A DNA stretch of 64,000 nucleotides, from positions 62,001 through 126,000 of IMG/VR virus record IMGVR_UViG_3300044700_000691, one strand, 5' to 3'. Both the position numbers and the translations under genes were made by a program. Numbering within the stretch: position 1 is the stretch's first letter; every line of letters begins with the position of its first letter. Under the pieces are notes generated by a model. The model searched no databases. It saw nothing but the letters and a program-made list of their open reading frames with translations, and had not been told where the DNA came from. Positions 7,766 through 26,347 of this stretch are shown here, piece after piece.

Positions 7766-8113
7766 TTATTGAGGCCAATTAGCTTCAATTGGAGAAGACC
7801 ACTCCTCAGTTGCAAGAAGAGCAAGGATTTCCGAATGAGTTAATTCTGGATAAGAGTCACTCCAAACCGAAGGCCTGCCATAGGTTCCGGCTATGGTCGT
7901 AAAAGTCGATTCTTCCATAGATTCAGGATTTAACATTGTTGTGACAATATCTTCTTCGACTACTTGAATTTCATATTTAATAAATGTTTTGGTTCCATCT
8001 AGTGAATATCGTAGGGACTCTTGATTAAATTCTAAAACCTGATCGAAATTGATAGATTCGACTAGGGCAGATGGAATTATTAACCATCTTCTGTTTTCAA
8101 ATGGGGTTTGCAT
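7766..8113 (-). CDS. Small hypothetical protein within the LamG cluster
   Basis: Intact ORF (INFDQVLE...SLRYSLDGTKTFIKY...THSEILALLATEEW) with a TAATG overlap with the upstream gene. Confidence 0.7.
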   Translation of the reverse strand: MQTPFENRRWLIIPSALVESINFDQVLEFNQESLRYSLDGTKTFIKYEIQVVEEDIVTTMLNPESMEESTFTTIAGTYGRPSVWSDSYPELTHSEILALLATEEWSSPIEANWPQ

Positions 8114-9681: not shown

Positions 9682-9694
9682 ATCTTAAATTATT

Positions 9695-10915: not shown

Positions 10916-10917
10916 AA

Positions 10918-11040
10918 TTATTGCTGTGTGGCAGAGTTTGCCTCGGCTTCAGAATAGTAAATACCAATTAAGTCGGCACCCTCTAGAACAAACCAGCATG
11001 GAGTGCCAGCTAAGTCAATTCCGGTTTCTACGTATTTCAT
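10918..11040 (-). CDS. Small hypothetical protein, 40 aa (MKYVETGIDLAGTPCWFVLEGADLIGIYYSEAEANSATQQ)
   Basis: ATGA overlap with the upstream gene and TAA 2 nt before the next ATG; it fills the gap exactly. Confidence 0.7.
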   Translation of the reverse strand: MKYVETGIDLAGTPCWFVLEGADLIGIYYSEAEANSATQQ

Positions 11041-11714: not shown

Positions 11715-11717
11715 AGA

Positions 11718-11969
11718 TTAAGGTTGAGCCGCTGCATTTTTTGCTTTATTGTGAAATAAGAGAGCATAGTACATAAAGGTATGAGTATAGATTCCATACT
11801 CTGGGGCACCAATATGAATTGGTCCGTTTTCACGTTCACAAATAAAGAATATAGTTGAGTTTACATCAACTATTCCAACGATTTTAAATCTGGAAACTGC
11901 TCCAATGTTGTAGTATGTGTCTAATTCATAGACAGCATCTTCGATTTGATATGTTTGTAAGTTTTGCAT
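11718..11969 (-). CDS. Hypothetical protein (83 aa)
   Basis: TAATG overlap with the upstream gene; fills the gap in the operon. Confidence 0.65.
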   Translation of the reverse strand: MQNLQTYQIEDAVYELDTYYNIGAVSRFKIVGIVDVNSTIFFICERENGPIHIGAPEYGIYTHTFMYYALLFHNKAKNAAAQP

Positions 11970-13285
11970 TATTCGAATCCTCCCATTTTTCTATTATGTG
12001 ATACAACTTCACCGATAACATAGGTGTGAGCTTGGTCAACTTCAATTTGAACTACTTCCATTTCTCCAATTGATTCAATCGATTCAATTTCGGCAAGTCC
12101 ATTTACTGTTTGTACTTTAGCACCTATCCATAGTTCGGATAGTGCAATAAAGCCCATACTTTCGGTTAAAAATTTGTGATTACTTGATACTTTAAGTTCT
12201 TGGCCTCCAATTACAGTACGGCTAACCATATTAGTTCCAGGATTAACTGCGGTCACCCTGTATGATCCCCATTCACCAGTTGTTTCGTGTTTAGTGTAAA
12301 CATAATCTCCAATAGTAAGCTCTCCAGCGGTCACCCAAGTATTAGGATTAATTAAGATTGGCATATCTGGAGTAGGGCAGAATGTTCCACATATTTGATT
12401 AAGATCTGCATATGCTCCATATAATTGAGATATTCCACAGAAAACAAGTTCTCCATAACAACACGAATACCCAGAGACAGGATTATCTAAACAGTCTCGA
12501 CCTTCCCAATATCCACTACCATCTGAAAAGAAATTATAACAGTTATTAGCAGGAGGTTGATATCCACATGTTGTAGAATTGCTTTCAGCCAGAGAAGAAT
12601 AGGTTCCATTACAACCATTTGAATAAGTATAGTAAAGATCAAATCCTGAGCAATAACTGCTTAGATAAGTTCCATTTGCTGGCGAACAGCAACAGCCGCC
12701 GCATGCAGTGGTACAACCTTGACTTACATCATAGGTTCCGCAGCTACCGTTTGCATATCGATAATAAAGAGTACACCCTGAACAAAATTGACTTAAGTAG
12801 GTGCCATTTGCTGGGCAGCCTGCGCTGGTCGTAATCGTTAAAATATTTGAATAACCCGAATAACCACCGGTTGAGGTACAGGTTATTCGCACTCTTATTA
12901 AATAGGTCATGCTTGAGGCAAGTCCACTAATAGTTCTGGTTGCTGAGCAGCCTCCAGAATCTGTGCTCCAGGTCGAACCGTCGTTTGCACTAGATTCAAC
13001 GTGCATAGTTGTACAATTTGAATAGCTAACATTAATTGTAATTGAACTTGATGTAACTGAATTACTGGAAATACTAGGAGCATTGCAGCAAGCAAACGTG
13101 TGATTATAGTTACGCCACTCAGATATTGAAGCTGGGTTAGCTGAAGAAGGAAAGCTTGGTGAGCACGAATTAATCGCAGCATAACTACCATTCTCAGCTG
13201 AGTCTAGACTAATATTTGTACCAGCTGCACGGCCAAGCTCTGTATTGATTTGGCTCATTGAAACCGTAGTCGCGCCTAGTGCCAT
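11969..13285 (-). CDS. Cys-rich tail-fibre-associated protein with an FN3-like domain and a C-terminal Hint domain (11993-12379)
   Basis: N-terminal SMSQINTELG...ISEW motif. FN3-like ISGLASSMTYLIRVR. Two PANGTYLS..CSG..LYY.Y.NG..GTY repeats. Hint block A (CPTPDMPIL), block B (SSNHKF) and blocks F/G (VVQIEVDQAHTY..VVSHN). Confidence 0.8.
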   Translation of the reverse strand: MALGATTVSMSQINTELGRAAGTNISLDSAENGSYAAINSCSPSFPSSANPASISEWRNYNHTFACCNAPSISSNSVTSSSITINVSYSNCTTMHVESSANDGSTWSTDSGGCSATRTISGLASSMTYLIRVRITCTSTGGYSGYSNILTITTSAGCPANGTYLSQFCSGCTLYYRYANGSCGTYDVSQGCTTACGGCCCSPANGTYLSSYCSGFDLYYTYSNGCNGTYSSLAESNSTTCGYQPPANNCYNFFSDGSGYWEGRDCLDNPVSGYSCCYGELVFCGISQLYGAYADLNQICGTFCPTPDMPILINPNTWVTAGELTIGDYVYTKHETTGEWGSYRVTAVNPGTNMVSRTVIGGQELKVSSNHKFLTESMGFIALSELWIGAKVQTVNGLAEIESIESIGEMEVVQIEVDQAHTYVIGEVVSHNRKMGGFE

Positions 13286-13286
13286 A

Positions 13287-16200
13287 TTATTCGCCTCTTA
13301 ATTTTTTAACCTCTAATTTAAGATCTTCTATTTGTGCCTGTTGCTCTTTAATAGCCTCAATTAAGAGTGCAGTCATGTTACCATAAGAAACATTATACAT
13401 TCCAGCGTTATCTTGATTTACAACTTCTGGAACAACTTCTAGCGTTTCTTGTGCAATAACTCCAATCTTAGTTCGAGTATCATCAGAATCAGTTCGGTTA
13501 TAAGAAACTCCACGTAGTGCTAAGGTTTTTGCTAGAGCATTTTCAATTGTATGTATATTGGTTTTAACTCTGGCATCTGAGTATGCTGTTACATCTCCAG
13601 CCATTGTAAGATTACCAGACATATCCATTTGCAATCTATTAGTAGATGCTGACCAACCACCAATGCGCATTACATTATCTGAGTCTAAACCAAAGTTTAC
13701 AGCATAATATCCCCCTCTATGAAAAGACATTATTGCACCACCACCATTATTTGAATATGCTTGTAAAGGAGCTGAATCTGTACTTGTATTTCTATTAGAT
13801 ACAAAATAATTTTGTCCTGTCCAACTATGACCATTACCTAATGAATTAGATATGCTGTTAGTATTACCTACTGTTTGAGATGCAATATTGTATGCTGTAA
13901 TAAATTCATAAAATGTACCATATGATGTAGATGTAGAAGCTTGAACACTTATTGCCATTCTTGGTGTACCATTTCTTAATGTATGTAAAGCACACATTTG
14001 AAGTACATCACCACCAGAATAACCATTAATCCAAAGTGTATCTGACCATACAGACCAAGCTCCTGTCATAGCAGCTTTTAATCCAATACCATTATTAAAA
14101 TATACTTGAGGATTAGTTTGTTGACCTCCAGCATAAGCTGTAGCTAAATATGTTGAATAACCACCAATATTTGTTTGGTCTCCAGTATTTGTACCAGAAG
14201 AAGAACCTGAATGGGAACCGCTAAAGTTTGATGAGGCAAAGGTTCCAGCTATCTGCATATTACCAGATGTAGCGTTTATTGCAGCTATTGGAGCATAAGA
14301 TATTCTACCCCAAGTAAATCCTCTACCTGCATCCCCATCATTCATTTGTGTTTTGATAGAATAATCATTAACCGGTCCATACTGATACAATGAAGATGAA
14401 CCCATACTAATTTTATAAGAATCCGATGACCAAAGCTTTAAACCATTACCTTCGCCTGGTGTCACATTATAGAAGGAGTTCTGATTACTTGCGTTTGGCG
14501 CGGAACCTGCGCTATTTGCATATCTTACACCAAGATCAGAAGGTTCAATCCAACCACTTCCTGAATATGCTCCATTATTATAAACGTATCTAGAGTAATC
14601 AACATAATTTCGACCTTCTCCTCTTGAAATAGCTACACGGGAACTAGCGTCAAACAGAGCCCCGGCATATAAATTATTAGCAGCTCTAACGTGTGAATCT
14701 CCATTGCCGACTGAAAATAATTCAGTTGCCATAGTAGAATCATCATAGAATCTAGTTCCACCATATCCAGTATTTGCTCCGATCTTAATTCCAGTGTGAT
14801 ATCCTATATGTAGATCTGGGTAAGGGTGACTCCAGCCTCCTCCACCTTGATAAATTGCATATGAGTGATTACTTGTGTTACCAGAATCTCCACCGACTCC
14901 AGTAAATCTTAGAACACGCAGAGTTCGATCTTCGTTATCTCTAAAATATGAAAAATTATTAATTTCAGTCTCAGTATAGTATCTGTCATCATGTGTATGT
15001 GAAGAAGCGGCCCATCCTCCGTAATTTCCTAAGTCATTTGAGAATTGAGAAAGAGCAGTTGGTCTACCTGTAACGCCGGTCCATGCAACATTGGTTGCAG
15101 TTGCAGCGTTTCCTGAAATATTTGTTTGATCACCAGTGTTTGTACCGCTTAAATTAGCTGCAAACCAGTTACCACTATTATCAGCATAAGCTCCCCAACT
15201 GTTAGATGAAGTTAAGAAACCGATTCTTCCACTATTACAGTGTATTCTTCTTGTAGTTTCATCTGTATCAGTCATGTAGATATCTGATGATGTACTATTA
15301 CCCACGGTTAGCGATCCATAAACTTGAACTCCTCCAGTATCTACTCTAACTCTCCAGCTATCTGTACTATCTAATAGTCCAAACCCTGCAGCATCTCCAT
15401 ACACTGATCCTTTAAGAGTACTTTCATGGTTAAGTCTAAATTGTAAGTGCACAACTGATCCGCCATTACCTGTAATACCCCATATAGAGCCTCCTCTTGA
15501 GTAAAAGTGATTTCCATTTGCCTGATTATAGAGACCAGTATTGTTTGAATTATTTCGGAACCAGCTGTTATTGTATAAGTCAGTAAAGGTTGGAGATGAT
15601 GAAGTTAGGAGAGCTTGGTTTAGATAACTAGATAACCAGGTTCCTCTGGTTCCAAAGTAAATATCGCCATTTACTAAGAAACTGCCATTTGTTCGTATAC
15701 CTGCATTAGGCGCATCTCCATAGAAATAGTAGGTTTCATTACCTACATAAATATTTGAGTCAAATCTAGCAGAACCTCCGCTATAAACCATTTTATTTCC
15801 GCGTACTCTTAGATAGGTACCGTCAGTCATAAACCAGCCGCCGCCCCAGCCAAAGGATAGGTCTTCATCTTTAAGGTAAGTTGAGGTACCTCGACCAAAC
15901 ACAATACCATCGTTATTGCCTAATAATTGAATTGAGCCATTTACATAAAGTCGGTTATTGGTTGGAACTCCAGTTGCACCAGAGTTATCAGAGGCAGTAT
16001 AAGAAAAATCAGTTGTTCCAAATCCAACCCGGCCGTCTTGGCCTACATAGATTGCATTTGTTCCAAACTTACCAATTTGTACAACATTGTTTGCAAATAC
16101 TTCAAGTACAGGTAAACCTGCAAGGGTATTTACGCTATATAGAGAATCTGAAAGATCATCAACTACTGTAAATAGTCGACCGTTAATTCCATTTACAGCA

Positions 16201-19200
16201 AAAGCTTCAGCTCCTTGGCTTGGGCTATTAATCGTTAAGGCACCGGTCATAGTGTCTCCGCTTACATTAACATATAAATTATCTGCAGTTGCTTGTGATA
16301 ATCCGCTTGAAGACAAAGTTACAGAGTTTCCGCCTGAAATACTTAGGGTATTTCCACTAAGGCTTAAGGTTTGACCATCAGTATTTGTGTCTGTATCAAT
16401 ATCATTAAATGCAGCAGTTAAGGTTGAACCATCACCTTGAGTTAAGGTTAAGGTTTTTGTACCAGTGCCGCTAAATGAAATTGCAGTAGGTCTCTTATCA
16501 TATGCAGTATTCCAGTTTGTTGAATTTCCTCCTGTTGCTGTGATAACTCCTACCGTCCAGATACCATAACCAATAGCTGTTTGGGTACTGCCATTAGCCA
16601 TAAATAGTGCTTGGTGTCCTAATCCAGATTTAGATTGTCCTCCTACATTTGTATGTGTCCATGCAATACCATAAAGAGATCCGGGAGAAGTACCATCGGC
16701 AGATACTTTGTAAGCATCTCCCATTGCAAATACACCCTGGTATCGATCGGAAGCATACAGGCCAACTATACCATTACCATAGTTATCGTCTATATAAAAA
16801 TTACCATTAGCTCGAGTTGCTCTTGCTGCAGTACCCGATACATTAATACTCCAAGTACCACTATTATAAACATAGGCAGTACCGTCTGAGTGTTTTAGTC
16901 TACCTCCATATATGTAAACGGTTCCGCCGCCATTACCAAAATACATATCACCACTTGAGTAATGATTAAAATACATTTGATAAACATTGCCTGCTCCACC
17001 TCTTGTGTCTATATGTAAATTACCGTTAGAAGTTCTAATACGAGCGTATGTTGTATCAGTCGACCAACCGCCAAGATGTAAAGCTGCCGCAGCACTATAT
17101 GAGCTAGCTCCGTATAGAATTAATGCAGTAGCATCACCATTTACAATTGTATTTGTAATATTTGTATAAACTCCATTTGTAACAGAACCGGCATTACCTG
17201 AAATATTAGTAACACTAGTTAAATATCCACTGTTATTAGTAAACTGAGAAATATTCATTGAACTTAGAGCGCCGGCTGTAGCTACAGTTTGTGAACCAAT
17301 GTTTGCTGAAGTTATTACAGCACTACCGTTCGCATACAATGTTCCGCCAATAGCAGCATAAGTATTTCCAGAAGTATCTATTTTAAATCTTTCTGTACCC
17401 CATCCATCTGAAGTTGAGTTATTATTTCTATAACCCATGTTTTGAGTAACACGAAAGTTATCATCATTAGAACAATATCCTACATTCCATCTAGTATCAT
17501 TACCTCCATATGAAAATTGAATAGATGGTCTATCAGAATCGGCAGTATTTATTCTATATCTAGCTACAATACCCCAAGAGTGATTACCTCTATCAGATTC
17601 AAAACTGTATGGAATAAAGTCTCCAGTTGCTGATTGTAAAGTTATCCATTTTCCAGATTGTCCATGGCTCGCTGTACCAACGTTACTTCTATGAAACTCA
17701 GAACCATCACTCCAATATTCATGACCCGCGCCTCCAGAAGGGGCTGCCGCTATATAGGTGTGACCATATATCCAGTTATCAGCGCCCGCTGTTGAAATAC
17801 CATTAGGAAAGAATGCAGAATCGGCAGTGTTCCAAGGATTTCCAGGACTTATGTAACCGCCTTTTGCATAGATAACATCTGTGCTAGGATTTACATAAAC
17901 GTGGGTTGTCCCATAAACATTATTACCAGAACCCCATAATAATTGATATGTTGAGTTTGAATTATTATCATAATTTATAGTTACTTGTGAAGATGTTCCT
18001 GCAATATTTGCATAGGCAACTCGTACACCAGCTGGAGTACCTGGAGAAACTTTAAGTTCCCAGTAACTACCACCATCATAGTTCATGTACATATAGTATG
18101 GAGCAGCTCCGCCGTAAACATAACTTCCATCACTAGCATATAATCGTGTAGAGTTTGTTGCGTAAGTAACAGATTGAGAACCAATATTACCGGTTGTGAT
18201 TAATCCTAAGTTTGATATAAAGTTTGCTGGAGTTTGATAACGCATATAGTCATCATCAGAACAATATATTTTATTTATACCACTTGAAAATGCTCCAGAA
18301 GTTGTGTTAATCCATCCCGCTTGAATATATCCATTGGCATCTGTTCTTACAATTTTGTTTACTTCATTGTTTCTACCACCGTGTACTGCTAACCCACCTG
18401 CTGTTGTAGCATTGCTTACAGACTGAGAGCCAATATTACCGGTTGTGATTGCGTCAGTAATGCCATAACCTGAAATTGTAGTTGGTTTACTGGTTAATGA
18501 AGCAAATGTATGCGAATGTGATATTGCTGCATATCTACCATCTAACAAAGATTGTTTCTTAGTTCGGAGACCATCTATACGTGATGAATTGACTGCAGCT
18601 AATCCTAATGGAGCAGGCGCAGGGACATCATATTGATTTGTACCTGACCAAGCATCATCATAAGATAATGTACTTGAACTATATAAAATGTCAGGTGAAC
18701 CGCTTTGATAAAAACCATTAATTGGTTGATCAGAAAATAGGTGATAAACTGCGCCACCTCCACGTAACATAAAGACATACCCCATTGAGTGGCTATATAT
18801 GAACATATCGGCGCATACGTTTGTATAAGATTCGTTAAATACTCGTAAACGATCTGCATATTCAGCACCGCCCCATCCACCAAAATTACCTTCCCAATCT
18901 AAGAGAAGACCTCCATGGTGAACACCTGTTCCAATTGGATCCCAAGGAGCAGGTTCACCATATCCGCGCTTAATAATAATTCTACGCCAAACATCCTGAT
19001 CTCCTCCCCAAAACTGAACAGCATAAAATCTGTCAGGGTCTCCATCAACTGTAATGTCAACAGAATATGGTAAGGTTGTAACGCCTAACATATTAGATAG
19101 GCCGTTAACTTTAGTCCCAGTTAATTGAGATCCACCTAGATATACACTGCTAAATGAAGGGGCACTGTCTGTTCTAACATTTTGATTTAGATAAGTAGAT

Positions 19201-20009
19201 AACCAATTTCCTCTAGTTCCCAAGTAAATATCTCCATTTGCTAAGAAATTACCATTGGTTCTGATACCAGAGTTTCCGGTATCGCCATAGAGGTAATACG
19301 AACCCTGTGAACCAACTGCTGCATTATTATAGCCAGGATAATATGGATGAGTTGAAAGTAGGTCTCCAGTTAGGGTTCCGCCTGAAAGTAATAAGTATCT
19401 ACCATCGTGGTTATGCGAAGGAAGACTTGTTAAATAACCCGCACTTGCATGGTTACCCCATCCGTATGCAGTGTTCCAATTTGAGGCATTATATCCAGAG
19501 GCAGAAATGGTACCAGTAATAGTTAAATTACCACCGTCCATGTCTAAAATTACGCGGCTTGTTCCTCCACCAACAAATTCAAAATCATTGTTATCACCAT
19601 TCCATCTTAAACCCCAGGCATTAGCAGCGGTTGCGTGCGAAGGATAATAATCTCCAGAGATACCCCAAATATCAAAGTTACCATCGCCTACATCTAAACC
19701 AACTATACCGCCAGGAAATCGTGGACGATTTGCTACCGCGGATGGAAATGTTATTTTTCCAGTTATTGTATCGCCAGCCTTTGAAACTTTACCTGCAAGT
19801 GAGCTCGTAAGTGTTGATGAAAAACTTGCATCATTTCCTAAAGCTGCTGCCAACTCATTAAGAGTATCTAGCGCGCCAGGGGCACCATTAATTAAGTTAT
19901 TAATTTGTGTTGTAACATAAGACGTTGTCGCAATGCTGTGAGCCGCTAGGTTTCCAGCATGGATCGCGCTGTGTCCAGCAATTGTAGTTCCTGATATTAA
20001 TTGTGCCAT
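13287..20009 (-). CDS. Long tail fibre (2240 aa) with a C-terminal peptidase S74 intramolecular chaperone (13287-13580)
   Basis: Gly/Asn/Ser/Thr-rich mosaic with ALDTLNELAAALGND repeat. C-terminus AY|SDARVKTNI...LRGVSY...GVIAQE...LLIEAIKEQQAQI. Confidence 0.9.
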   Translation of the reverse strand: MAQLISGTTIAGHSAIHAGNLAAHSIATTSYVTTQINNLINGAPGALDTLNELAAALGNDASFSSTLTSSLAGKVSKAGDTITGKITFPSAVANRPRFPGGIVGLDVGDGNFDIWGISGDYYPSHATAANAWGLRWNGDNNDFEFVGGGTSRVILDMDGGNLTITGTISASGYNASNWNTAYGWGNHASAGYLTSLPSHNHDGRYLLLSGGTLTGDLLSTHPYYPGYNNAAVGSQGSYYLYGDTGNSGIRTNGNFLANGDIYLGTRGNWLSTYLNQNVRTDSAPSFSSVYLGGSQLTGTKVNGLSNMLGVTTLPYSVDITVDGDPDRFYAVQFWGGDQDVWRRIIIKRGYGEPAPWDPIGTGVHHGGLLLDWEGNFGGWGGAEYADRLRVFNESYTNVCADMFIYSHSMGYVFMLRGGGAVYHLFSDQPINGFYQSGSPDILYSSSTLSYDDAWSGTNQYDVPAPAPLGLAAVNSSRIDGLRTKKQSLLDGRYAAISHSHTFASLTSKPTTISGYGITDAITTGNIGSQSVSNATTAGGLAVHGGRNNEVNKIVRTDANGYIQAGWINTTSGAFSSGINKIYCSDDDYMRYQTPANFISNLGLITTGNIGSQSVTYATNSTRLYASDGSYVYGGAAPYYMYMNYDGGSYWELKVSPGTPAGVRVAYANIAGTSSQVTINYDNNSNSTYQLLWGSGNNVYGTTHVYVNPSTDVIYAKGGYISPGNPWNTADSAFFPNGISTAGADNWIYGHTYIAAAPSGGAGHEYWSDGSEFHRSNVGTASHGQSGKWITLQSATGDFIPYSFESDRGNHSWGIVARYRINTADSDRPSIQFSYGGNDTRWNVGYCSNDDNFRVTQNMGYRNNNSTSDGWGTERFKIDTSGNTYAAIGGTLYANGSAVITSANIGSQTVATAGALSSMNISQFTNNSGYLTSVTNISGNAGSVTNGVYTNITNTIVNGDATALILYGASSYSAAAALHLGGWSTDTTYARIRTSNGNLHIDTRGGAGNVYQMYFNHYSSGDMYFGNGGGTVYIYGGRLKHSDGTAYVYNSGTWSINVSGTAARATRANGNFYIDDNYGNGIVGLYASDRYQGVFAMGDAYKVSADGTSPGSLYGIAWTHTNVGGQSKSGLGHQALFMANGSTQTAIGYGIWTVGVITATGGNSTNWNTAYDKRPTAISFSGTGTKTLTLTQGDGSTLTAAFNDIDTDTNTDGQTLSLSGNTLSISGGNSVTLSSSGLSQATADNLYVNVSGDTMTGALTINSPSQGAEAFAVNGINGRLFTVVDDLSDSLYSVNTLAGLPVLEVFANNVVQIGKFGTNAIYVGQDGRVGFGTTDFSYTASDNSGATGVPTNNRLYVNGSIQLLGNNDGIVFGRGTSTYLKDEDLSFGWGGGWFMTDGTYLRVRGNKMVYSGGSARFDSNIYVGNETYYFYGDAPNAGIRTNGSFLVNGDIYFGTRGTWLSSYLNQALLTSSSPTFTDLYNNSWFRNNSNNTGLYNQANGNHFYSRGGSIWGITGNGGSVVHLQFRLNHESTLKGSVYGDAAGFGLLDSTDSWRVRVDTGGVQVYGSLTVGNSTSSDIYMTDTDETTRRIHCNSGRIGFLTSSNSWGAYADNSGNWFAANLSGTNTGDQTNISGNAATATNVAWTGVTGRPTALSQFSNDLGNYGGWAASSHTHDDRYYTETEINNFSYFRDNEDRTLRVLRFTGVGGDSGNTSNHSYAIYQGGGGWSHPYPDLHIGYHTGIKIGANTGYGGTRFYDDSTMATELFSVGNGDSHVRAANNLYAGALFDASSRVAISRGEGRNYVDYSRYVYNNGAYSGSGWIEPSDLGVRYANSAGSAPNASNQNSFYNVTPGEGNGLKLWSSDSYKISMGSSSLYQYGPVNDYSIKTQMNDGDAGRGFTWGRISYAPIAAINATSGNMQIAGTFASSNFSGSHSGSSSGTNTGDQTNIGGYSTYLATAYAGGQQTNPQVYFNNGIGLKAAMTGAWSVWSDTLWINGYSGGDVLQMCALHTLRNGTPRMAISVQASTSTSYGTFYEFITAYNIASQTVGNTNSISNSLGNGHSWTGQNYFVSNRNTSTDSAPLQAYSNNGGGAIMSFHRGGYYAVNFGLDSDNVMRIGGWSASTNRLQMDMSGNLTMAGDVTAYSDARVKTNIHTIENALAKTLALRGVSYNRTDSDDTRTKIGVIAQETLEVVPEVVNQDNAGMYNVSYGNMTALLIEAIKEQQAQIEDLKLEVKKLRGE
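15012..15119 (-). repeat. 36-codon module shared with 22355-22462 (identical protein, 16 synonymous differences)
   Basis: Codon-by-codon comparison of ISGNAATATNVAWTGVTGRPTALSQFSNDLGNYGGW in both fibre genes. Confidence 0.9.
17218..17261. repeat. 44-bp repeat shared with 20952-20995 (1 mismatch), between the two fibre genes
   Basis: gttaaatatccactgttattagtaaactg(a/t)gaaatattcattga. Confidence 0.9.
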
Positions 20010-20014
20010 ATTAG

Positions 20015-23000
20015 TTATCTATTTTCAAGATTTTCAATTCTCTCGGTTAATTTTTTAATTATTTCATGCTGTTCTTGAATTGTCTTAATCAAGATTGGCG
20101 CGATACGAGTATAGTTAATACCATCAACTTGACCTTCACTATCATATTTAACTAATTCAGGATAGATTTCAGCAACCTCTTCCGCAATTAAACCAATTTC
20201 AGTTTCGCCAGTTCCACCAATTTTAACATAGTGAACTGGTCTTAGTTGTAAGACTTTATCTAGAGCTGGAGTTAGGGACTCAACTTGAGTTTTATATCTA
20301 ATAGATGATAATTCTATTAATCGATTTGCGATTGTTAGGGTTCCAGTATTACTTACTTCAAGTAAACGGTCTCCATCAATTGCACCTTGCCATATAACGA
20401 AATCATCCATTGTATTTGCACCACCGCCGACTCCACCGTCTGTATTTAGCACAAAATGGTGACCTCCTCTAGATTGGTATTCTAGCCAATAATTAGAGCC
20501 TGCTGCAAAACCTTCGCTTGGATAAGCTGCTGCTCGAATTATATTATAAAATCCGCCAGATCCGTCTCTAAATGCAAGTTCGCCGATGATATTTAAGTTT
20601 CCACTAAGGGTACCTCCACTTAGTGATAAGTAGTAGCTATCTGTAACCTGACTCCTAAAGTGACCAGGCGTAGATTTTCTTAAATAGTTATCACTTGTAT
20701 TTTGAGTCCAAATTTGACCAATAGTTGGGTTTTCTGAGTTACCAGCAGAAGCATTAAAATATGATCCTAAGACATAGTTTGAATAGATATTTCCGCTAGA
20801 GTCTCTTCGTACAATTGTATTTACGTTTGCTGCAGTATCTGAAGTATATCCATCCAATAAATCTGCGTCTAAACCAGAACCAGCTCCATCATTTCCTGCA
20901 TGCCAAGGCGTATATCCAAGAGCAGTAGTAACGTTTCCGCTTGTTATACTTGTTAAATATCCACTGTTATTAGTAAACTGTGAAATATTCATTGAGGTTA
21001 AAGCTCCGGCAGTGGTTGCAGTAGCAGCATTGCCGCTAATATTAGTTTGATCTCCTGTATTTGTACCAGAAGATGACCCACTAAAGTTAGTTGCACTTAT
21101 GGTGCCAGTAACAGAAAGGTTACCCCCACTAGTTAAAGATAATCTTCTAGCAGCGTTCCATTGAATAACAAAATCTGCACCAGCCGCCCCACCAGATCTA
21201 GTCATACCAAGTCTCCAGTGGTCGTTGTACCATTGATATTCATGACCAGAGACTAGGTCATTTGTGGTGTACGAAGATGGAATGTATACAGCAACCTCTC
21301 TTCCTTCACTACCGGTTATTGTTATTGGAGTTGACGTGGTTGCTCCTCTACCTGTTACACTCGCTAGAGTATCGGTTTCTGTATATCCAGTTATGTAACC
21401 TTGAGAAGTTACCCATGATTGAGTTGCTAATAGGTTTCCAGCTGCATACGGTACATATTTAAAATATGCAGTATTTGCAGTAGTTATTTCAAGCGCAACT
21501 ACAGTTGGATCATAGATATCACCATATCCAAGTTTAAAGCTATTTGTGTTAGCATTATTAGTCATTCCCATCGACCACATTGGTGCTCCTGTGTAATCCC
21601 AAGCAGTTCCTTGATATGTGCCCATGGCGGTCATAAACATTAGTGTTGCCTGATTCCCTGTTCCTTGTCGGCTAATGAATACTCTGGCAGTTCCTGTTTT
21701 AGCGCTAACATATAATTCTGGATTAGATCCAGCCAATTGAATTTGTGCTGGGTTAGCACTAATTGGAGAAATGTACAGATTTCCTGTCATTTCATCTCCA
21801 CCTATATTAACATATAGCCCGTCTGCTGTTGCTTGAGAAATTCCAGTTGATGCAAGCGTTACAGAGTTACCTCCTGAAATACTTAAGGTATTTCCAGAAA
21901 GACTAAGCGTTTGTGCATCAGTATTTGTATCAGTATCAATATCTGTCCAAGTTGCAGTTACTGTGCCTCCATCTCTTTGTGTAAGAGTTAGGGTTTTTGA
22001 AGTTGTTCCACTAACTGCAGCTGAAGTTATTGTATCATTATATGCAGAATTCCAATTCGCTGAAGTACCATGACTTGGCGTAGAAATTCCACTTGCATTA
22101 ATTACAATAGGCGCAGAAAAGGGTCCAATATTAACAGTATTATTAGCAAAGGCTTCGATTACAGGAAGACCTGCTACCGTATTTACTGAAAATAGAGAAT
22201 TTGAAAGATCATCACTTACTGTGAACAGTCTGCCATTAACTCCGTTTACTGCAAATAATTCCTGGCCGCTGGTTGAACCAGTAATTACTAAAGGCCCAGT
22301 CATTGTGTCGCCAGTTACATTAACATATAGCGGATTAGCTGCTGCTTGTGTTAACCAGCCGCCATAGTTTCCTAAGTCATTAGAGAATTGAGAAAGAGCA
22401 GTAGGTCTGCCTGTTACTCCAGTCCATGCTACATTCGTAGCGGTAGCAGCGTTTCCAGAAATACCAATTGCCCAAGTGCCGTTTTCCCAAACGTAATTGT
22501 AACCTGAACCAGTTTTTAAATTACCATCAGTTGCTAAATAAAATTTAAGAGCTCCAGATTGAGTAAACTTAATTTCTTCGTTTGAGTCATCTTGTGTACC
22601 AATTTCAAGGTAAGATCCTCCAGCCTGGTTGCCGGTTGATATAAATTTAATAAATGCGGCATCTGTATTTAATCCCCAAGTAAGTCCTAATCCAGATGTT
22701 GCACCAAAGGCAAGATTACCAGTCATTGTATCACCACTTTTAGAAACTTTGTTTCCTATTGATGTGGTAATTGTGGTAGCAAAATTAGCATCATTACCTA
22801 ATGCGGTAGCTAATTCGTTAAGTGTGTCTAGTGTACTAGGAGCCGATGCAACTAAGTTAGAAACAGCTGTGTTTACATAGGTTTGAGTTGCATATCCAGA
22901 AAGAGCGGAGGTTGTAATATAAGCTGGGCCATTGGTTAATTGGTTTAGGTTAGTTAAGTTACCAGCTGTCCATACTTGTGAGTTATCCCAATATAGCCTT

Positions 23001-25897
23001 TGGTCTACTCTCATTTCTAAGAACTTACCAACCACACCACTAATATGAAATGCTATACCGGTCGTTGTGTTGTTATAGGATTCAGTCCAAAGAGCAGCTG
23101 TTGTATAATCGCCGTCGCCTTGCGCTTTTCGAGCGTATAATCCGCCTGCAAATACAGAAGCAGTATTTGTGGTTGCACCACGTCCGGTTACACTAGCAAG
23201 AGTATCAGTTTCTGCATAAGATGTGATATAACCTGCTCCGTTTGTTAACTGATTGTTATTAGTAGGTATTGTTATAACTCCAGTTGTAGCGTTATATGCG
23301 CCACTGCCTGCCGTAAAGCTATGAGCAGCTCTAGCCAAAGCATCCGTATATTGTGTTATTGTAGAACTAATAGCACCAGTTGTATTGTTATAACTAATAC
23401 CTGTGCTTCCACTTAAAGAAGTTAAAGTAATATATGAGCTTGAATCAACGGAACCATCTGCTTTTAAGAATTGGGTACTGGTTCCTCCAGCTTTTACAAA
23501 TGAATTTGCTGTAAAATTACCAGATCCATAAATAGCTCCACTTGGATCAACATATGCTCTAACTGATCCGCCTGACATAAAATTAAGCCGGCCGTACATG
23601 GTTGAACCATCTCTATGAACAATAGGGAATTGATCAATACCTTCGCCATTATCAATTGCGATATTAACGGTTTGTAGATTGACGCCTAAACCAGCTTGAG
23701 GAGTGAATGTAATTTCCCATGTATCAATGAAGTTTGCTCCACCACATGGAATTTTCCAAAATGCAAACTGACCAGTTATGCTTATGTCAGATCCAGTGAA
23801 TGGGCCATAATACACACCGCTTGTATTTCTTACTCTAACCGTAACGTTAGCGGGCGGATAGTTTACCCAGAATCCAAGATAAACGTTACCACTTGAATAA
23901 ACTGCATTTTCTCCATTATTTAATCGGTAGGTTCTAACCCAAGTACTCCCGGCATTTGGATAAGTTCCAGTATAAGAATCAGTTTGTGTATATCGGTTAC
24001 TTCCACCAAATAATAACTCTTTTATAATTACCGGGTTAACTGTAATAGTTTTTCCAGAGAACACACTTTGGGTAATATAATCGCCATATGTAACTGCATT
24101 AGTAATACCATATCCAGCAAGAGTAGTAGGATTAGATCCTGCTGTAACTCGGCCTTTTGCATCAACTGTTACTGATTTATAAGTAGAAGCAGTAACTCCA
24201 GTATTTGATAATGCAGTTGAAATTGAGGTTGTTCCAGATCCAGTAATATCACCGCTTAGTGTTATTGTTTGGTTTCCGGTAATATATGTATTTGTATCTA
24301 GTGACCAAGTATTTGCAGCAGTTTTCTTTAAGAATCCGCTGGTTGCTGCAAGTGCAGCAATTGCATCTAAATCTCCGTCCCATGCCTGAACGTCAGTTCC
24401 AATTACAACTCCTAAGTTAGTTCTACCGTAACCCTTTTGGGTTGCAGTAAGACCTTGTGTATTAATATCAACTCTTAGTCTATTACCCAAGGCGGTAGAT
24501 ACGGTAGTTGAGAATGAAGCGTCGTTTCCTAATGCTGCAGCAAGTTCGTTTAGAGTATCTAATGCAGCTGGCGAGCTTGCTACTAAATTAGAAACAGCTG
24601 TGTTTACATAGGTTTGAGTTGCATAACCTTGTGTTGCGTGATTACCCCATCCGTATGCTGTATTCCAATTGTTTACATCGGTTTGTGTAAAGTTTCCGGT
24701 TGTCCATGCATCAACATATGAAGAATAAGGACTAGTTGAACCCCAAGTTTGTTGCCAAATGCGCATTCCAATACCAGATTTCTTGAACATGATAAGGTTA
24801 TCTGTTCCACCAGACGAATCTGTATAAGAACGCATGTGTATAAAATCTGCGTATGGAGAATTGTTATCATTAGTCCATGACGTAAAACCAAATTTCATTT
24901 GGCCAGCTGTCAGTTCACTGGGAGATATTGTTCGGTTATCTTCTCTAATTAAAGTTCCAGCATATCCTGAAATATTTGTAACAGAAGTTAAATAGCCTGC
25001 GGTAGCGTGATTACCCCATCCGTATGCTGTATTCCAATTAGATTTTTCAGTTGTTGTAATTGACTTAACATGAGAAGGTACAGTCGGATCAGTTTCTGTA
25101 TAGGAAGTAATATAATTTGGAGTCCAATTAACCCATTGCGATCCATTAAATTGTAATAGCTGATTAGTAGCAGCCGATGTTATTGTAACATCAGTTAAGC
25201 TGTCTAAGTTTGTTGGAATTGAAATATTAGTTGCAGATACGGCAGTAACCAAACCTTTGGCATTAACTGTAATTACAGGAACTGCTGTCGCTGAACCAAA
25301 TTGGCCAACGTTTGAGTTAACTGTCGCTAGGGCTAAACCTATATTGCCGTTTGCTGTTAATGGTGAGTTTGCAATTGTAAAGTCTGCACCAGTAATTCCA
25401 ACTGAAGTTAAGGGCGGGGTTACTGTATTATAACCAATCGTCCACCAATAAGTTGTACCATCATAGTAAACTCCTAAGACATCAGTTGCATTTGCAGCTG
25501 GACTTGCAGTATAGGTACCGCCGCCAACAATTGAACTTGAGCCTGGCAGGGTTAGGGTTCGGCTACCAGCTGCATCTTGTTTAACCAAGATTAAACCAGT
25601 ATCGCCAGTTTCCATATTGGAAAGTACTAACGTTCTAGCTCCAGCGAGGGTTACCTTTGCATTTGCTCCAGAGTTAAAGTCCCAAGTAATAGCTGCGCCA
25701 TCAGTCAGGGTTTGCTGAGCCATTGTAACCTTACCATTAACCTTAAGATTGCCGGCAACTGTGAATTTTTTAGTCGCCTGTAGAGTTAATGTAAGATTGC
25801 CATTATCATCATGCTGTAGATACGGTTTGTTCGACGTAGTATTACCTATGAATTCTAATAAACCGGATGCGGGAGTTATCTTGACCGTTTGCGCCAC
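20015..25897 (-). CDS. Long tail fibre (1960 aa, GTG start) with a C-terminal peptidase S74 chaperone (20015-20308)
   Basis: Fibre repeats (VTVDAKGRVTAG, LDTLNELAAALGND, GSGLDADLLDG). C-terminus L|SSIRYKTQV...LRPVHY...GLIAEEV...LIKTIQE. Confidence 0.9.
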   Translation of the reverse strand: MAQTVKITPASGLLEFIGNTTSNKPYLQHDDNGNLTLTLQATKKFTVAGNLKVNGKVTMAQQTLTDGAAITWDFNSGANAKVTLAGARTLVLSNMETGDTGLILVKQDAAGSRTLTLPGSSSIVGGGTYTASPAANATDVLGVYYDGTTYWWTIGYNTVTPPLTSVGITGADFTIANSPLTANGNIGLALATVNSNVGQFGSATAVPVITVNAKGLVTAVSATNISIPTNLDSLTDVTITSAATNQLLQFNGSQWVNWTPNYITSYTETDPTVPSHVKSITTTEKSNWNTAYGWGNHATAGYLTSVTNISGYAGTLIREDNRTISPSELTAGQMKFGFTSWTNDNNSPYADFIHMRSYTDSSGGTDNLIMFKKSGIGMRIWQQTWGSTSPYSSYVDAWTTGNFTQTDVNNWNTAYGWGNHATQGYATQTYVNTAVSNLVASSPAALDTLNELAAALGNDASFSTTVSTALGNRLRVDINTQGLTATQKGYGRTNLGVVIGTDVQAWDGDLDAIAALAATSGFLKKTAANTWSLDTNTYITGNQTITLSGDITGSGTTSISTALSNTGVTASTYKSVTVDAKGRVTAGSNPTTLAGYGITNAVTYGDYITQSVFSGKTITVNPVIIKELLFGGSNRYTQTDSYTGTYPNAGSTWVRTYRLNNGENAVYSSGNVYLGFWVNYPPANVTVRVRNTSGVYYGPFTGSDISITGQFAFWKIPCGGANFIDTWEITFTPQAGLGVNLQTVNIAIDNGEGIDQFPIVHRDGSTMYGRLNFMSGGSVRAYVDPSGAIYGSGNFTANSFVKAGGTSTQFLKADGSVDSSSYITLTSLSGSTGISYNNTTGAISSTITQYTDALARAAHSFTAGSGAYNATTGVITIPTNNNQLTNGAGYITSYAETDTLASVTGRGATTNTASVFAGGLYARKAQGDGDYTTAALWTESYNNTTTGIAFHISGVVGKFLEMRVDQRLYWDNSQVWTAGNLTNLNQLTNGPAYITTSALSGYATQTYVNTAVSNLVASAPSTLDTLNELATALGNDANFATTITTSIGNKVSKSGDTMTGNLAFGATSGLGLTWGLNTDAAFIKFISTGNQAGGSYLEIGTQDDSNEEIKFTQSGALKFYLATDGNLKTGSGYNYVWENGTWAIGISGNAATATNVAWTGVTGRPTALSQFSNDLGNYGGWLTQAAANPLYVNVTGDTMTGPLVITGSTSGQELFAVNGVNGRLFTVSDDLSNSLFSVNTVAGLPVIEAFANNTVNIGPFSAPIVINASGISTPSHGTSANWNSAYNDTITSAAVSGTTSKTLTLTQRDGGTVTATWTDIDTDTNTDAQTLSLSGNTLSISGGNSVTLASTGISQATADGLYVNIGGDEMTGNLYISPISANPAQIQLAGSNPELYVSAKTGTARVFISRQGTGNQATLMFMTAMGTYQGTAWDYTGAPMWSMGMTNNANTNSFKLGYGDIYDPTVVALEITTANTAYFKYVPYAAGNLLATQSWVTSQGYITGYTETDTLASVTGRGATTSTPITITGSEGREVAVYIPSSYTTNDLVSGHEYQWYNDHWRLGMTRSGGAAGADFVIQWNAARRLSLTSGGNLSVTGTISATNFSGSSSGTNTGDQTNISGNAATATTAGALTSMNISQFTNNSGYLTSITSGNVTTALGYTPWHAGNDGAGSGLDADLLDGYTSDTAANVNTIVRRDSSGNIYSNYVLGSYFNASAGNSENPTIGQIWTQNTSDNYLRKSTPGHFRSQVTDSYYLSLSGGTLSGNLNIIGELAFRDGSGGFYNIIRAAAYPSEGFAAGSNYWLEYQSRGGHHFVLNTDGGVGGGANTMDDFVIWQGAIDGDRLLEVSNTGTLTIANRLIELSSIRYKTQVESLTPALDKVLQLRPVHYVKIGGTGETEIGLIAEEVAEIYPELVKYDSEGQVDGINYTRIAPILIKTIQEQHEIIKKLTERIENLENR
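22857..22894. repeat. Exact 38-bp direct repeat with 24588-24625
   Basis: ttagaaacagctgtgtttacataggtttgagttgcata, encoding YATQTYVNTAVSN. Confidence 0.9.
24636..24670. repeat. Exact 35-bp direct repeat with 25005-25039; a diverged copy lies near 19447-19481
   Basis: gcgtgattaccccatccgtatgctgtattccaatt, encoding NWNTAYGWGNHA. Confidence 0.9.
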
Positions 25898-25918: not shown

Positions 25919-26347
25919 TTATTTATTCATGTCTATCTCAATTTGTAATGGTTTAACATCTTTACGTTCAGCCTGCACTAAATAAAAAAAAGTTGGCTTG
26001 TGCGAGCCTGCTACTTCAAAATAAGTATCAGTAATATGTTTAATCCACAACGATTGAGATTTACCGAATGGTGTAATTGTAACTGTGATTGAGTCCGCAT
26101 TTGCTAAGCTTGCCCAATATTCTGGAAAAAAGATACGTTTAGCTTCACTCTTTCCTCTAAGGTAGATGCCATGTTCGGGGCCTTCTAAGTTACCGTGCGC
26201 AAGTTTAAAACCTGGCTTGGTTGGATGGTCAATTAAGAACTGCTTGGTAACAGCTGAAAAATTACCATTATGACTAATATCTCCAGACGTTTCGTTATAC
26301 GTCATGTGAGTACTGATATTAACTTGTTTTAGTTTAACTTGAGCCAT
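25919..26347 (-). CDS. Short fibre-associated protein with a fibre C-terminal/chaperone-like domain
   Basis: KQFLIDHPTKPG.KLAHGNLEGPEHGIYLRG...PEYW...ITVTITP...FFYLVQAERKDV, a motif usually seen at phage fibre C-termini. Confidence 0.6.
   Translation of the reverse strand: MAQVKLKQVNISTHMTYNETSGDISHNGNFSAVTKQFLIDHPTKPGFKLAHGNLEGPEHGIYLRGKSEAKRIFFPEYWASLANADSITVTITPFGKSQSLWIKHITDTYFEVAGSHKPTFFYLVQAERKDVKPLQIEIDMNK
25920..25926 (-). promoter_or_regulatory. Late promoter candidate ATAAATA for the fibre operon
   Basis: Overlaps the stop of the upstream gene, about 22 nt before the GTG at 25897. Confidence 0.55.

What the first reader, a model, noticed from the sequence alone, without database searches (positions are those of the whole stretch)
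13287..25897. Two giant fibres built from shared linker cassettes in different order: signature of module shuffling
Seen: short blocks recur within and between the genes in non-collinear order (LDTLNELAAALGND, NWNTAYGWGNHA, MNISQFTNNSGYLTS, GTNTGDQTNI, DIDTDTNTD.QTLSLSGNTLSISGGNSVTL, FAVNG.NGRLFTV.DDLS, NVAWTGVTGRPTALSQFSNDLGNYGGW), and they flank unrelated variable domains. One 36-codon block has 16 synonymous and 0 non-synonymous differences, indicating an old duplication under purifying selection. Others are identical or nearly so at DNA level (38/38, 35/35, 43/44), suggesting recent exchange. Inference: conserved linkers act both as structural joints and as homology anchors for recombinational swapping of receptor-binding modules, giving a DGR-independent diversification route.
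Basis: partly seen in the sequence, partly recalled or inferred. Interest (0 to 1): 0.6.

Follow-up and report, generated by a model that had tools for sequence, protein, structure and literature searches.

The report
Mosaic giant phage tail fibres
Two neighbouring 2,000-residue tail-fibre genes of an uncultured freshwater jumbo phage are assembled from a shared set of cassettes bounded by short conserved motifs. Related phages carry the same cassettes in other orders, so this is a clear new example of the known way phages vary their host-recognition fibres by recombination.

Summary
Both ORFs are tail fibres ending in a Peptidase_S74 chaperone domain. They lie in a 216.8 kb viral record whose other structural genes resemble jumbo phages of Bacteroidota.

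Five related lineages keep the flanking genes collinear, but their fibre pairs differ in length (1960/2240, 1713/2079, 2056/1584, 2875/511 with five inserted genes, 1861/1095). Block order also differs, and cassettes of gene A sit in gene B elsewhere.

Ends of shared segments fall at the blocks more often than chance (23/30 against 41% expected). I resolved five junctions: three at a recurrent x-Y-I/L-T joint, one in a NIGSQ repeat and one at an HxH box. A natural in-frame 873-nt deletion bounded by two joints occurs in two metagenome studies.

The homology-anchor idea is only partly supported. Junction homology is 1 to about 20 nt and most blocks are old at the DNA level, but three 29-38 nt exact tracts look like recent conversion. 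That the swapped modules bind receptors is untested.

The principle has been known since the T-even and P2 fibre work, so this is a new member of a known kind.

The parts
20015..25897 (-). Fibre gene B, 1960 aa, GTG start
   Evidence: ORF. Peptidase_S74 at residues 1864-1917, 44.1 bits. PHROG tail-fibre families.
13287..20009 (-). Fibre gene A, 2240 aa, starting 5 nt after the stop of B
   Evidence: ORF. Peptidase_S74 at residues 2144-2197, 55.3 bits. PHROG tail-fibre families.
25106..25897 (-). B1-264, the conserved N-terminal anchor domain, ending in the first joint (NWTPNYIT)
   Evidence: 85-97% nt identity in four lineages. All four diverge directly after this joint.
25088..25122 (-). Joint / YITxYTETD block, copy 1 (B259-270)
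   Evidence: Repeat family D10. Breakpoint in four lineages. The R346 junction lies in the 10-nt TATATTACTT.
24980..25063 (-). NWNTAYGWGNHA block, copy 1 in B (B279-306)
   Evidence: Holds one arm of the 35-nt exact repeat.
24476..24694 (-). NWN copy 2 plus LDTLNELAAALGND block, copy 1 in B (B402-474)
   Evidence: Holds arms of both the 35-nt and the 38-nt exact repeats.
23435..25102 (-). B266-821, absent from the R346/L006 allele
   Evidence: Junction read at nucleotide level. The allele is reproduced in a second sample with 1 mismatch in 19.6 kb.
23144..23239 (-). Joint plus YITxYAETDTLASVTGRGATT block, copy 2 (B887-918)
   Evidence: Upstream end of the 873-nt population deletion.
22353..23225 (-). 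873 nt (B892-1182), skipped in frame in contigs of two metagenome studies
   Evidence: Joint 22352->23226 in runs X9 and X13, with flanks 98-99% identical to the window. The junction peptide reads ...NGAGYIT|QAAANPLYVNV.
22706..22954 (-). LDT block copy 2 plus SGDTMTG motif in B (B982-1064)
   Evidence: Matches PDB 9d93 gp4 and 6v8i gp68. Holds one arm of the 38-nt exact repeat.
22355..22462 (-). 36-aa NVAWTG block in B (B1146-1181)
   Evidence: 36/36 aa and 92/108 nt against the A copy.
22118..22354 (-). Joint (LYVNVTGDTMTG) plus FAVNG block in B (B1182-1260)
   Evidence: 55/79 aa against A1237-1315.
21710..22090 (-). DIDT block plus second joint in B (B1270-1396)
   Evidence: 77/127 aa against A1154-1280.
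21311..21406 (-). Joint plus YITGYTETDTLASVTGRGATT block, copy 3 (B1498-1529)
   Evidence: Segment ends of four lineages lie at B1498-1523.
20939..21166 (-). GTNTGDQTNI plus MNISQFTNNSGYLTS blocks in B (B1578-1653)
   Evidence: 43/44 nt match to gene A. Breakpoints at B1657-1665.
20132..20362 (-). C-terminal chaperone region of B (B1846-1922)
   Evidence: The sequence LSSIRYK has Ser and Lys five residues apart.
19746..19946 (-). LDT block plus SGDTITG motif in A (A22-88)
   Evidence: Breakpoints at A76-84 in two lineages.
19422..19490 (-). NWN block in A (A174-196)
19392..19415 (-). HxH box 1 in A (SHNHDGRY, A199-206)
19140..19301 (-). GIRT block, copy 1 in A (A237-290); copy 2 is at 15573-15734
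   Evidence: 35/54 aa between the two copies.
18375..18491 (-). GYGITDA plus NIGSQ repeat, copy 1 (A507-545)
   Evidence: R346_A joins this copy directly to MNIS, so A541-~911 is absent there.
17205..17315 (-). NIGSQ copy 3 plus MNIS block in A (A899-935)
16065..16550 (-). DIDT - joint - FAVNG cassette in A (A1154-1315)
   Evidence: Homologous cassette sits in gene B of the R402 lineage.
15012..15155 (-). GTNTGDQTNI plus the 36-aa NVAWTG block in A (A1619-1666)
14970..15005 (-). HxH box 3 in A (SSHTHDDRYYTE, A1669-1680)
   Evidence: Junction with the 511-aa fibre of the R402 lineage. Upstream is unrelated and downstream is 87% nt identical.
13401..13634 (-). C-terminal chaperone region of A (A2126-2203)
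   Evidence: The sequence YSDARVK has Ser and Lys five residues apart. Breakpoints at A2138-2142 in three lineages.
25919..26347 (-). Conserved 142-aa upstream flank gene
   Evidence: Used to find relatives; 89-100% identity in the clade.
11969..13285 (-). 438-aa downstream flank gene
   Evidence: Used to find relatives; 63-100% identity in the clade.

Best explanation
Genes A and B encode two long tail fibres of an uncultured freshwater jumbo phage, probably infecting a member of Bacteroidota. By analogy with other fibres of this type, each is expected to form a homotrimer and to cut off its C-terminal S74 chaperone after folding.

Each fibre has a conserved N-terminal anchor, a shaft made of cassettes, and a distal part ahead of the chaperone. 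The cassettes come from a pool shared with the sister gene, with close relatives and with many other freshwater phages.

Cassette borders carry a small vocabulary of conserved motifs:
- the x-Y/W-I/L-T joint, often written QFTNNSGYLT, NQLTNGPGYIT or NDLGNYGGW;
- the LDT helix;
- the SGDTMTG strand;
- the NIGSQ motif;
- the HxH box.

Recombination at or beside these motifs adds, removes or replaces cassettes in frame. This recombination is unequal within a gene, occurs between the two genes, and occurs between co-infecting phages.

What is shown: mosaicism, the position of junctions, and the existence of natural in-frame variants.

What is inferred:
- The motifs are structural registers, so a junction there gives a foldable fibre. 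Selection would therefore keep such junctions.
- Short homology or microhomology helps to place the crossover.
- The changes alter fibre length, geometry or host recognition.
For: Identity as fibres:
- S74 domain in both genes.
- PHROG tail-fibre hits for both genes; the 308-aa gene at 27978-28904 matches the baseplate-wedge tail-fibre connector family, phrog_677.
- A Bacteroidota jumbo-phage context, in freshwater runs.

Mosaicism:
- Five lineages have collinear flanks but different fibre lengths and block orders.
- WIN A1154-1677 is homologous to R402_B 1924-2401.
- The WIN A82-166 module sits in R346 gene B.
- The same vocabulary appears in other orders in other contigs. Variable cassettes are shared with them at 75-87% nt.

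Junctions:
- R346 lacks B266-821, with the crossover in the 10-nt TATATTACTT.
- A break follows directly after the YITGYTETD...GATTST block.
- A NIGSQ copy 1 / copy 3 hybrid exists in R346_A.
- There is a junction at the HxH box.
- All lineages diverge after NWTPNY(I/L)T.

Statistics:
- 23/30 segment ends lie within 5 aa of a block against 40.7% expected, p=7e-5. For unique sites the figure is 15/22, p=0.009.
- 20/137 ends lie within 6 aa of a joint against 5.5 expected.
- G[YW][ILV]T occurs 88 times against 8 expected.

Population: an in-frame 873-nt skip between two joints is seen in two studies.

Conversion-like exact tracts are present. The record encodes a RecA-family recombinase. The alleles are reproduced in independent assemblies.
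Against: - No structure supports the 'register' role. Both AlphaFold2 single-sequence models were unusable (pLDDT 35 and 38).
- Only about 15% of segment ends among 26 fibres lie at the x-Y-I/L-T joint. The blocks cover 33-37% of the genes, so the enrichment is real but moderate.
- HSP ends are approximate markers of crossovers in diverged sequence.
- The read evidence comes from assembled contigs, not raw or long reads.
- The deletion junction was not found in IMG/VR contigs.
- Host, receptor and any phenotypic effect are unknown.
Confidence: 0.75

Rival explanations
1. DNA identity within the blocks is the main driver: homologous recombination starts in the blocks, which were kept partly for that purpose.
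For: - Three exact tracts of 29-38 nt are clustered beyond expectation.
- A RecA-family recombinase is encoded in the record.
- The R346 junction lies in 10 identical bases.
- The NIGSQ junction lies in about 20 nt of partial homology.
Against: - Most paralogous blocks are 52-70% identical in DNA, with evenly scattered synonymous differences. That is too diverged for efficient homologous recombination between the copies now present.
- The 873-nt deletion has 1 nt of shared sequence at the junction.
- The 36-aa block is kept at the peptide level, not at the DNA level.
Confidence: 0.25
2. The blocks are purely structural. Recombination is illegitimate and random along the gene, and only junctions at domain borders survive selection. 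DNA similarity plays no part.
For: - The junction with 1 nt of homology sits at equivalent positions of two diverged joint motifs.
- Blocks are conserved as peptides across saturated synonymous sites.
- The LDT block is shared with fibres of very distant phages in the PDB.
Against: The exact 29-38 nt tracts inside otherwise diverged blocks are hard to explain without DNA-level exchange between block copies. One clean junction has 10 nt of identity.
Confidence: 0.3
3. Duplication and divergence in place, with no exchange between genes or phages.
For: Internal repeats exist within A and within B.
Against: - Close relatives with 85-97% identical anchors and flanks carry different cassettes at the same place.
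- Cassettes change gene between lineages.
- The same cassettes occur at 75-87% nt in contigs that lack the clade's flank genes.
Confidence: 0.03
4. An assembly artefact: metagenome assemblers joined the wrong pieces at the repeats.
For: Short-read contigs of public runs break at the repeated blocks.
Against: - Exact repeats are at most 38 nt.
- The window allele is identical over 31 kb in another record.
- The R346 allele recurs with 1 mismatch in 19.6 kb in another sample.
- The R402 allele recurs at 99.995% in another sample.
- All the fibre alleles compared here keep a long open frame.
Confidence: 0.02
5. Programmed diversification by a diversity-generating retroelement or an invertase shufflon.
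For: None found.
Against: - No RVT_1 match in the 216.8 kb record, which is 84% complete.
- Mismatches are not adenine-biased.
- Only short imperfect inverted repeats exist, and all blocks are direct.
Confidence: 0.02

Closest known systems
T-even phage distal fibre locus (gp37/gp38): recombination between conserved motifs ('His boxes') swaps adhesin specificity. Tetart, Desplats and Krisch 1998, PMID 9737921, as cited in PMC1079782 and PMC10408124.
   Same: Conserved short motifs separate variable segments. Alleles in relatives are mosaics with junctions at the motifs. Fibre A even carries HxH boxes, and one junction lies at such a box.
   Different: There is no detectable homology of the shafts to gp37 or gp38; the PHROG 'distal subunit' hits cover only the C-terminal chaperone region. 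Here whole cassettes along a 2,000-residue shaft are shuffled, in two tandem genes, using about a dozen motif types. No experiment links any change to host range.
Mosaic tail-fibre genes of P2, Mu, P1, lambda and relatives (Haggard-Ljungquist et al. 1992, PMC206541, cited in PMC1079782); conserved DNA motifs around receptor-binding domains as proposed recombination hotspots (PMC10408124).
   Same: Fibre gene segments are transferred horizontally among otherwise unrelated phages. The N-terminal anchor is conserved and the rest is exchangeable.
   Different: Those cases mostly swap one C-terminal receptor-binding part. Here internal cassettes are gained, lost and permuted as well.
Fibres and spikes with a C-terminal intramolecular chaperone (Peptidase_S74: K1F endosialidase, T5 L-shaped fibre pb1). 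The examples are from my own knowledge.
   Same: An S74 domain above the Pfam threshold, with Ser and Lys five residues apart at the expected cleavage site in both genes.
   Different: The fibres are much longer and occur as a tandem pair. Cleavage and trimerisation have not been observed here.
The LDT motif of solved fibres: PDB 9d93 gp4 'tail collar fibers' and 6v8i gp68 'Fiber Upper'.
   Same: The block SAP..LDTLNELA.ALG.D.NFAT aligns with both chains, E = 1.6e-10 and 1.5e-4.
   Different: Only this roughly 60-residue block is shared. The remainder of the proteins is unrelated.

Membership tests
Tail fibre with C-terminal intramolecular chaperone (Peptidase_S74) | PF13884 match above the gathering score at the C-terminus | tested here: met
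   A scores 55.3 bits and B 44.1 bits against a cut-off of 22.
Tail fibre with C-terminal intramolecular chaperone (Peptidase_S74) | Ser and Lys five residues apart at the self-cleavage site. The spacing is from my own knowledge of K1F endosialidase. | tested here: met
   A reads YSDARVK and B reads LSSIRYK at the start of the domain. This was read from the sequence, not assayed.
Tail fibre with C-terminal intramolecular chaperone (Peptidase_S74) | Homotrimer that releases the chaperone after folding | not testable with these tools
   The monomer models were unusable. No trimer model was made.
Virion tail fibre of a contractile-tailed jumbo phage | Location in a baseplate/fibre gene module of a phage genome | tested here: met
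   The record is viral and 216.8 kb long. The 308-aa gene at 27978-28904 matches the baseplate-wedge tail-fibre connector family, phrog_677. A 1224-aa structural protein is homologous to those of Tenacibaculum, Flavobacterium and Chryseobacterium jumbo phages.
T-even gp37/gp38 His-box recombination system | Sequence homology to gp37/gp38 | tested here: not met
   Only the chaperone region matches PHROG 'long tail fiber distal subunit' families. No Pfam gp37 or gp38 family matched.
T-even gp37/gp38 His-box recombination system | Conserved motifs, including HxH, that bound variable segments and coincide with junctions between alleles | tested here: met
   This shows that the locus works like that system, not that it is a member.
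Diversity-generating retroelement | Reverse transcriptase plus template/variable repeat with adenine-specific mismatches | tested here: not met
   No RVT_1 match. Mismatches are not adenine-biased and, in the 36-codon block, are all synonymous.
Invertible fibre segments (Mu Gin, P1 Cin) or shufflon | Inverted crossover sites flanking alternative fibre ends, with an invertase | tested here: not met
   Only short imperfect inverted repeats exist, and all blocks are direct. No invertase was searched for specifically.

The most novel reading that the evidence does not exclude
The giant fibres of a wide group of freshwater, probably Bacteroidota-infecting, phages follow a simple grammar. Cassettes end in a universal x-Y-I/L-T joint with a small set of permitted continuations, so almost any cassette can follow any other in frame. 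Populations continuously hold cassette gain and loss variants. Within this grammar, the 36-residue NVAWTG peptide is invariant across saturated synonymous sites in several phages. This reading takes it to be a docking site for a conserved partner, such as a branch fibre, an assembly factor or a host structure, rather than a mere spacer.
Probability: 0.3. Interest if true: 0.55.

Novelty: new member of a known kind. Interest (0 to 1): 0.4.

Why it matters
Tail fibres decide which bacteria a phage can attack. How uncultured environmental phages change them is known mostly by extrapolation from coliphages.

This locus gives an unusually readable natural record:
- five allelic architectures;
- junctions resolved at nucleotide level;
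- a population-level in-frame cassette deletion;
- a motif vocabulary shared by many freshwater phages.

It could serve as a rule set for delimiting fibre modules in metagenomic phages, and for choosing splice points when fibres are engineered in laboratory phage-host pairs. It does not change the established view that fibres evolve by recombination at conserved motifs.

Tried and rejected
- Megablast of the 12.6 kb against 50,697 phage records gave no match.
- Whole-protein search of the PDB matched only the LDT block.
- AlphaFold2 was run without alignments on B860-1070 and B1120-1400. Mean pLDDT was 35 and 38, so the models were not used and no fold search was run. The only hints are a helical LDT block and strand-rich cassettes. 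The loci in hand held too few full-length homologues for a useful alignment.
- ESM Atlas feature search of the A tip and of A291-506 gave only weak tail-fibre-like leads below the recognition level. Two earlier calls failed on a size limit and were corrected.
- An exact search for the 873-nt deletion junction in IMG/VR found nothing.
- RecT, ERF and Rad52 families are absent from the record.
- Most loose ends and contig breaks in the laid contigs lie at the repeated blocks. I did not count them as evidence, because short-read graphs break at repeats shared by A and B.
- The first blastp dot-plot was swamped by low-complexity gapped alignments and one script timed out. Both were replaced by an ungapped scan.
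- A literature search for the PDB code 9d93 returned unrelated papers.
- Complex prediction, the large representative search and the search for homologous proteins were not used, because no claim here rests on them.
No other genetic code was used. No spliced model was involved.
Full report
WHAT IS THERE

The window is bases 62001-126000 of a 216,815-base IMG/VR viral record. CheckV estimates the record as 84% complete. G+C is about 0.39 across the region.

Coordinates 13287-25897 are filled by two minus-strand ORFs separated by 5 nt. Gene B is 20015-25897 (1960 aa, GTG start). Gene A is 13287-20009 (2240 aa).

Both end in a Peptidase_S74 intramolecular chaperone domain, scoring 44.1 and 55.3 bits against a cut-off of 22. 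Ser and Lys lie five residues apart at the expected cleavage site: LSSIRYK in B and YSDARVK in A. I read this; the spacing rule comes from my own knowledge of K1F endosialidase.

PHROG matches for both genes are tail-fibre families. Among the neighbouring genes, the 308-aa gene at 27978-28904 matches the baseplate-wedge tail-fibre connector family.

A 1224-aa structural protein of the window is most similar to proteins of Tenacibaculum, Flavobacterium and Chryseobacterium jumbo phages, of Sphingomonas phage PAU, and of large uncultured and Prevotella phage records. The FAVNG block matches annotated tail fibres of Flavobacterium phages. The best genomic matches of the NVAWTG block are in Bacteroidota MAGs. 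All public runs that hold the DNA are freshwater or lake metagenomes.

So these are two giant tail fibres of an uncultured freshwater jumbo phage. The host phylum is an inference.

THE OBSERVATION

- The seven motifs recur within and between the genes.
- A1631-1666 and B1146-1181 are identical in 36/36 residues and 92/108 bases. There are 16 synonymous codon differences, all at third positions.
- The exact DNA matches are 38 nt (22857/24588), 35 nt (24636/25005) and 43/44 nt (17218-17261 against 20952-20995). The first two pairs lie inside gene B, not between the genes.
- The order is non-collinear. A has DIDT-joint-FAVNG and later GTNTGDQ-NVAWTG. B has NVAWTG-joint-FAVNG-DIDT-joint and later GTNTGDQ-MNIS.
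- Chance does not produce this. There are 94 repeated 14-mers against 0.9 in codon shuffles. There are 19 strong ungapped A x B segments against 0-1 in shuffles.
- The blocks occur in no other gene of the record.
The first is a joint x-Y/W-I/L-T: G[YW][ILV]T occurs 88 times in 32 fibres against 8 expected. The second is an HxH box, S-H-x-H-D-D/G-R-Y, three times in A: 34 HxH in the fibre set against 9.7 expected.

I used the two flanking genes as probes: the 142-aa gene at 25919-26347 and the 438-aa gene at 11969-13285. This recovered the locus from related viral contigs and I merged overlapping loci. Flanking genes are collinear, but the fibre pair differs in every lineage.

| Lineage | Gene B (aa) | Gene A (aa) |
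|---|---|---|
| Window (an identical copy is in a second record) | 1960 | 2240 |
| R346 | 1713 | 2079 |
| R569 | 2056 | 1584 |
| R402 | 2875 | 511, after five unrelated inserted genes |
| L043 | 1861 | 1095 |

.

The alleles are reproducible. The window allele is identical over 31 kb in another record. R346 recurs with 1 mismatch in 19.6 kb in another sample. R402 recurs at 99.995% in another sample.

Block order differs among lineages, and cassettes change gene:
- WIN A1154-1677 is homologous to R402_B 1924-2401, at 64% aa and 78.6% nt over 1 kb.
- The module WIN A82-166 lies in gene B of R346.

The same vocabulary, in yet other orders, builds fibres of 1,500-2,400 aa in contigs that lack the clade's flank genes. 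The 'variable' cassettes are shared with such contigs too, at 75-87% nt.

The stated refutation, collinear relatives with breakpoints unrelated to the repeats, is therefore not met.

JUNCTIONS

1. R346_B equals WIN_B without B266-821. Identity to the left parent ends and identity to the right parent begins inside TATATTACTT, which encodes Y-I-T.
2. All four lineages are 85-97% identical up to NWTPNY(I/L)T at B264. Each then continues differently.
3. High identity with R346 runs through the YITGYTETD...GATTST block and stops right after it. R346 then continues with the module that follows the LDT block in WIN gene A.
4. R346_A joins NIGSQ repeat copy 1 to the MNIS block that follows copy 3 in WIN, so A541 to about A911 is absent. 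The switch lies in about 20 nt of partial homology.
5. The 511-aa fibre of R402 and WIN A share 87% nt from the HxH box onward but have unrelated cassettes upstream of it.
6. The distal part A1833-2138 is replaced in two lineages. Its right end is at the start of the chaperone.

STATISTICS

Blocks were defined from the window alone. Of 30 ends of shared segments (300 nt or more, 78% identity or more), 23 lie within 5 aa of a block. A random position does so 40.7% of the time (p = 7e-5). After merging recurrent sites the count is 15 of 22 (p = 0.009).

Among 26 fibres from the fetched loci, 20 of 137 ends of segments with 70-99.5% identity lie within 6 aa of an x-Y-I/L-T joint. The expectation is 5.5 (P < 0.001).

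The enrichment is real but moderate. The joint explains only a minority of borders, and HSP ends are approximate.

POPULATION DATA

Only assembled contigs of public runs were available, not raw or long reads. I laid four runs from four studies on gene B (5,883 letters).

Two of them (X9 and X13) hold a contig that skips 22353-23225. This is 873 nt, in frame, and its flanks are 98-99% identical to the window. The junction peptide reads ...NGAGYIT|QAAANPLYVNV. The deletion therefore runs from just after one joint to just after the next joint-like GGWLT, with 1 nt of shared sequence.

I found no IMG/VR contig with this exact junction. Contig breaks at the repeats were not counted as evidence.

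AGE AND SELECTION

Most block pairs (NVAWTG, DIDT, FAVNG, GIRT, YITETD) show evenly scattered synonymous differences, so they are old copies kept by selection on the peptide.

The 36-residue NVAWTG peptide is encoded by five distinct nucleotide versions in different contigs, 75-88% identical to the version in gene A.

In contrast, the 38, 35 and 29 nt exact runs are clustered far beyond a column-shuffle expectation (P < 0.0002, < 0.0002 and 0.004). This is what short, recent conversion tracts between block copies would look like.

In the parts orthologous between the window and R346, blocks and non-blocks have the same low pN/pS, 0.077 and 0.067. The fibres therefore vary by cassette replacement, not by point-mutation hypervariability.

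MECHANISM

Shown:
- The fibres are mosaics of cassettes drawn from a shared pool.
- Junctions concentrate at a small set of conserved motifs.
- In-frame cassette variants coexist in nature.

Inferred:
- The motifs are structural registers of a trimeric shaft, so junctions placed there fold, and selection keeps them.
- Short homology or microhomology helps to place crossovers.
- A RecA-family recombinase encoded elsewhere in the record may contribute.

DNA homology as the main anchor is only partly supported. Junction homology is 1 to about 20 nt, and most paralogous blocks are 52-70% identical in DNA.

That the internal modules bind receptors is untested. They may set the length and geometry of the shaft, with only the distal part ahead of the chaperone contacting the host.

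A DGR and an invertase system are excluded as far as the record goes.

COMPARISON AND NOVELTY

The principle is established. The literature I read records extensive swapping of fibre gene fragments between loci, and recombination between conserved motifs that swaps adhesin specificity in T-even phages (PMC1079782, citing PMID 9737921 and PMC206541). It also proposes conserved motifs around receptor-binding domains as recombination hotspots (PMC10408124).

HxH motifs are known from T4 gp37, where they coordinate iron (PMC11705849). The LDT block is a pan-phage fibre motif present in solved structures 9d93 and 6v8i.

The locus works like the T-even system but is not a member of it, because no shaft homology was found. 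It is a member of the S74-chaperone fibre class.

What is new here:
- the scale, with two tandem fibres of about 2,000 residues and about a dozen motif types;
- the clade;
- the clean natural junctions;
- the joint motif;
- the invariant 36-residue peptide.

I rate it a new member of a known kind, interest 0.4.

LIMITS

- No usable structure was obtained.
- No raw or long reads were available.
- Host and phenotype are unknown.
- Relatives come from metagenome assemblies.
- The block definition covers a third of each gene.

Noticed in passing
window 5693-11714, minus strand: Five paralogous genes lie downstream of the fibres (225, 406, 522, 237 and 484 aa). They are 25-32% identical with a shared C-terminal region, and match PHROG 'virion structural protein' families. 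Their number and lengths differ among relatives (R346: 231, 398, 409, 222, 388, 424 aa). The variable island therefore extends beyond the two fibres.
   Followed up: partly
L039:3419-8452 (the same in R402 merged, 11074-16107): In one lineage, five non-fibre genes sit between the giant fibre and a short 511-aa fibre. Their PHROG families are 1417 (twice), 1604, 1409 and 1458, and the last carries a Methyltransf_24 domain. The arrangement is identical in two independent assemblies.
   Followed up: partly
window 15012-15119 and 22355-22462: The 36-residue NVAWTG peptide is invariant in both genes and in other phage contigs. It is encoded by five distinct nucleotide versions, 75-88% identical to the version in gene A. 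No function is known, and conservation is far above that of the surrounding fibre.
   Followed up: partly
window 19392-19415, 18504-18518, 14970-15005: Gene A has three HxH boxes (S-H-x-H, mostly followed by D-D/G-R-Y) and gene B has none. They resemble the iron-binding HxH motifs of T4 gp37.
   Followed up: partly
window 24588-24670: Two perfect patches, 38 nt and 35 nt, lie 10 nt apart in gene B. They match two different remote places of the same gene (22857 and 25005). This looks like a composite made by two separate short exchanges.
   Followed up: partly
G000:C1:142530-143246, outside the window: A 399-aa ORF matches RecA (75.7 bits). It is the only recombinase family of the four I searched that was found in the record.
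   Followed up: no
window 38123-47942, minus strand: Two further giant ORFs are present: 2040 aa (phrog_31887) and 1224 aa (phrog_29329). The 1224-aa protein is conserved in Bacteroidota jumbo phages and in large uncultured phage records of 460-735 kb.
   Followed up: no
window 11969-13285 against 25919-26347: Between the window and the R346 lineage, the upstream flank gene is 100% identical in protein but the downstream flank gene is only 68%. The whole distal end of the structural module is therefore mosaic.
   Followed up: no
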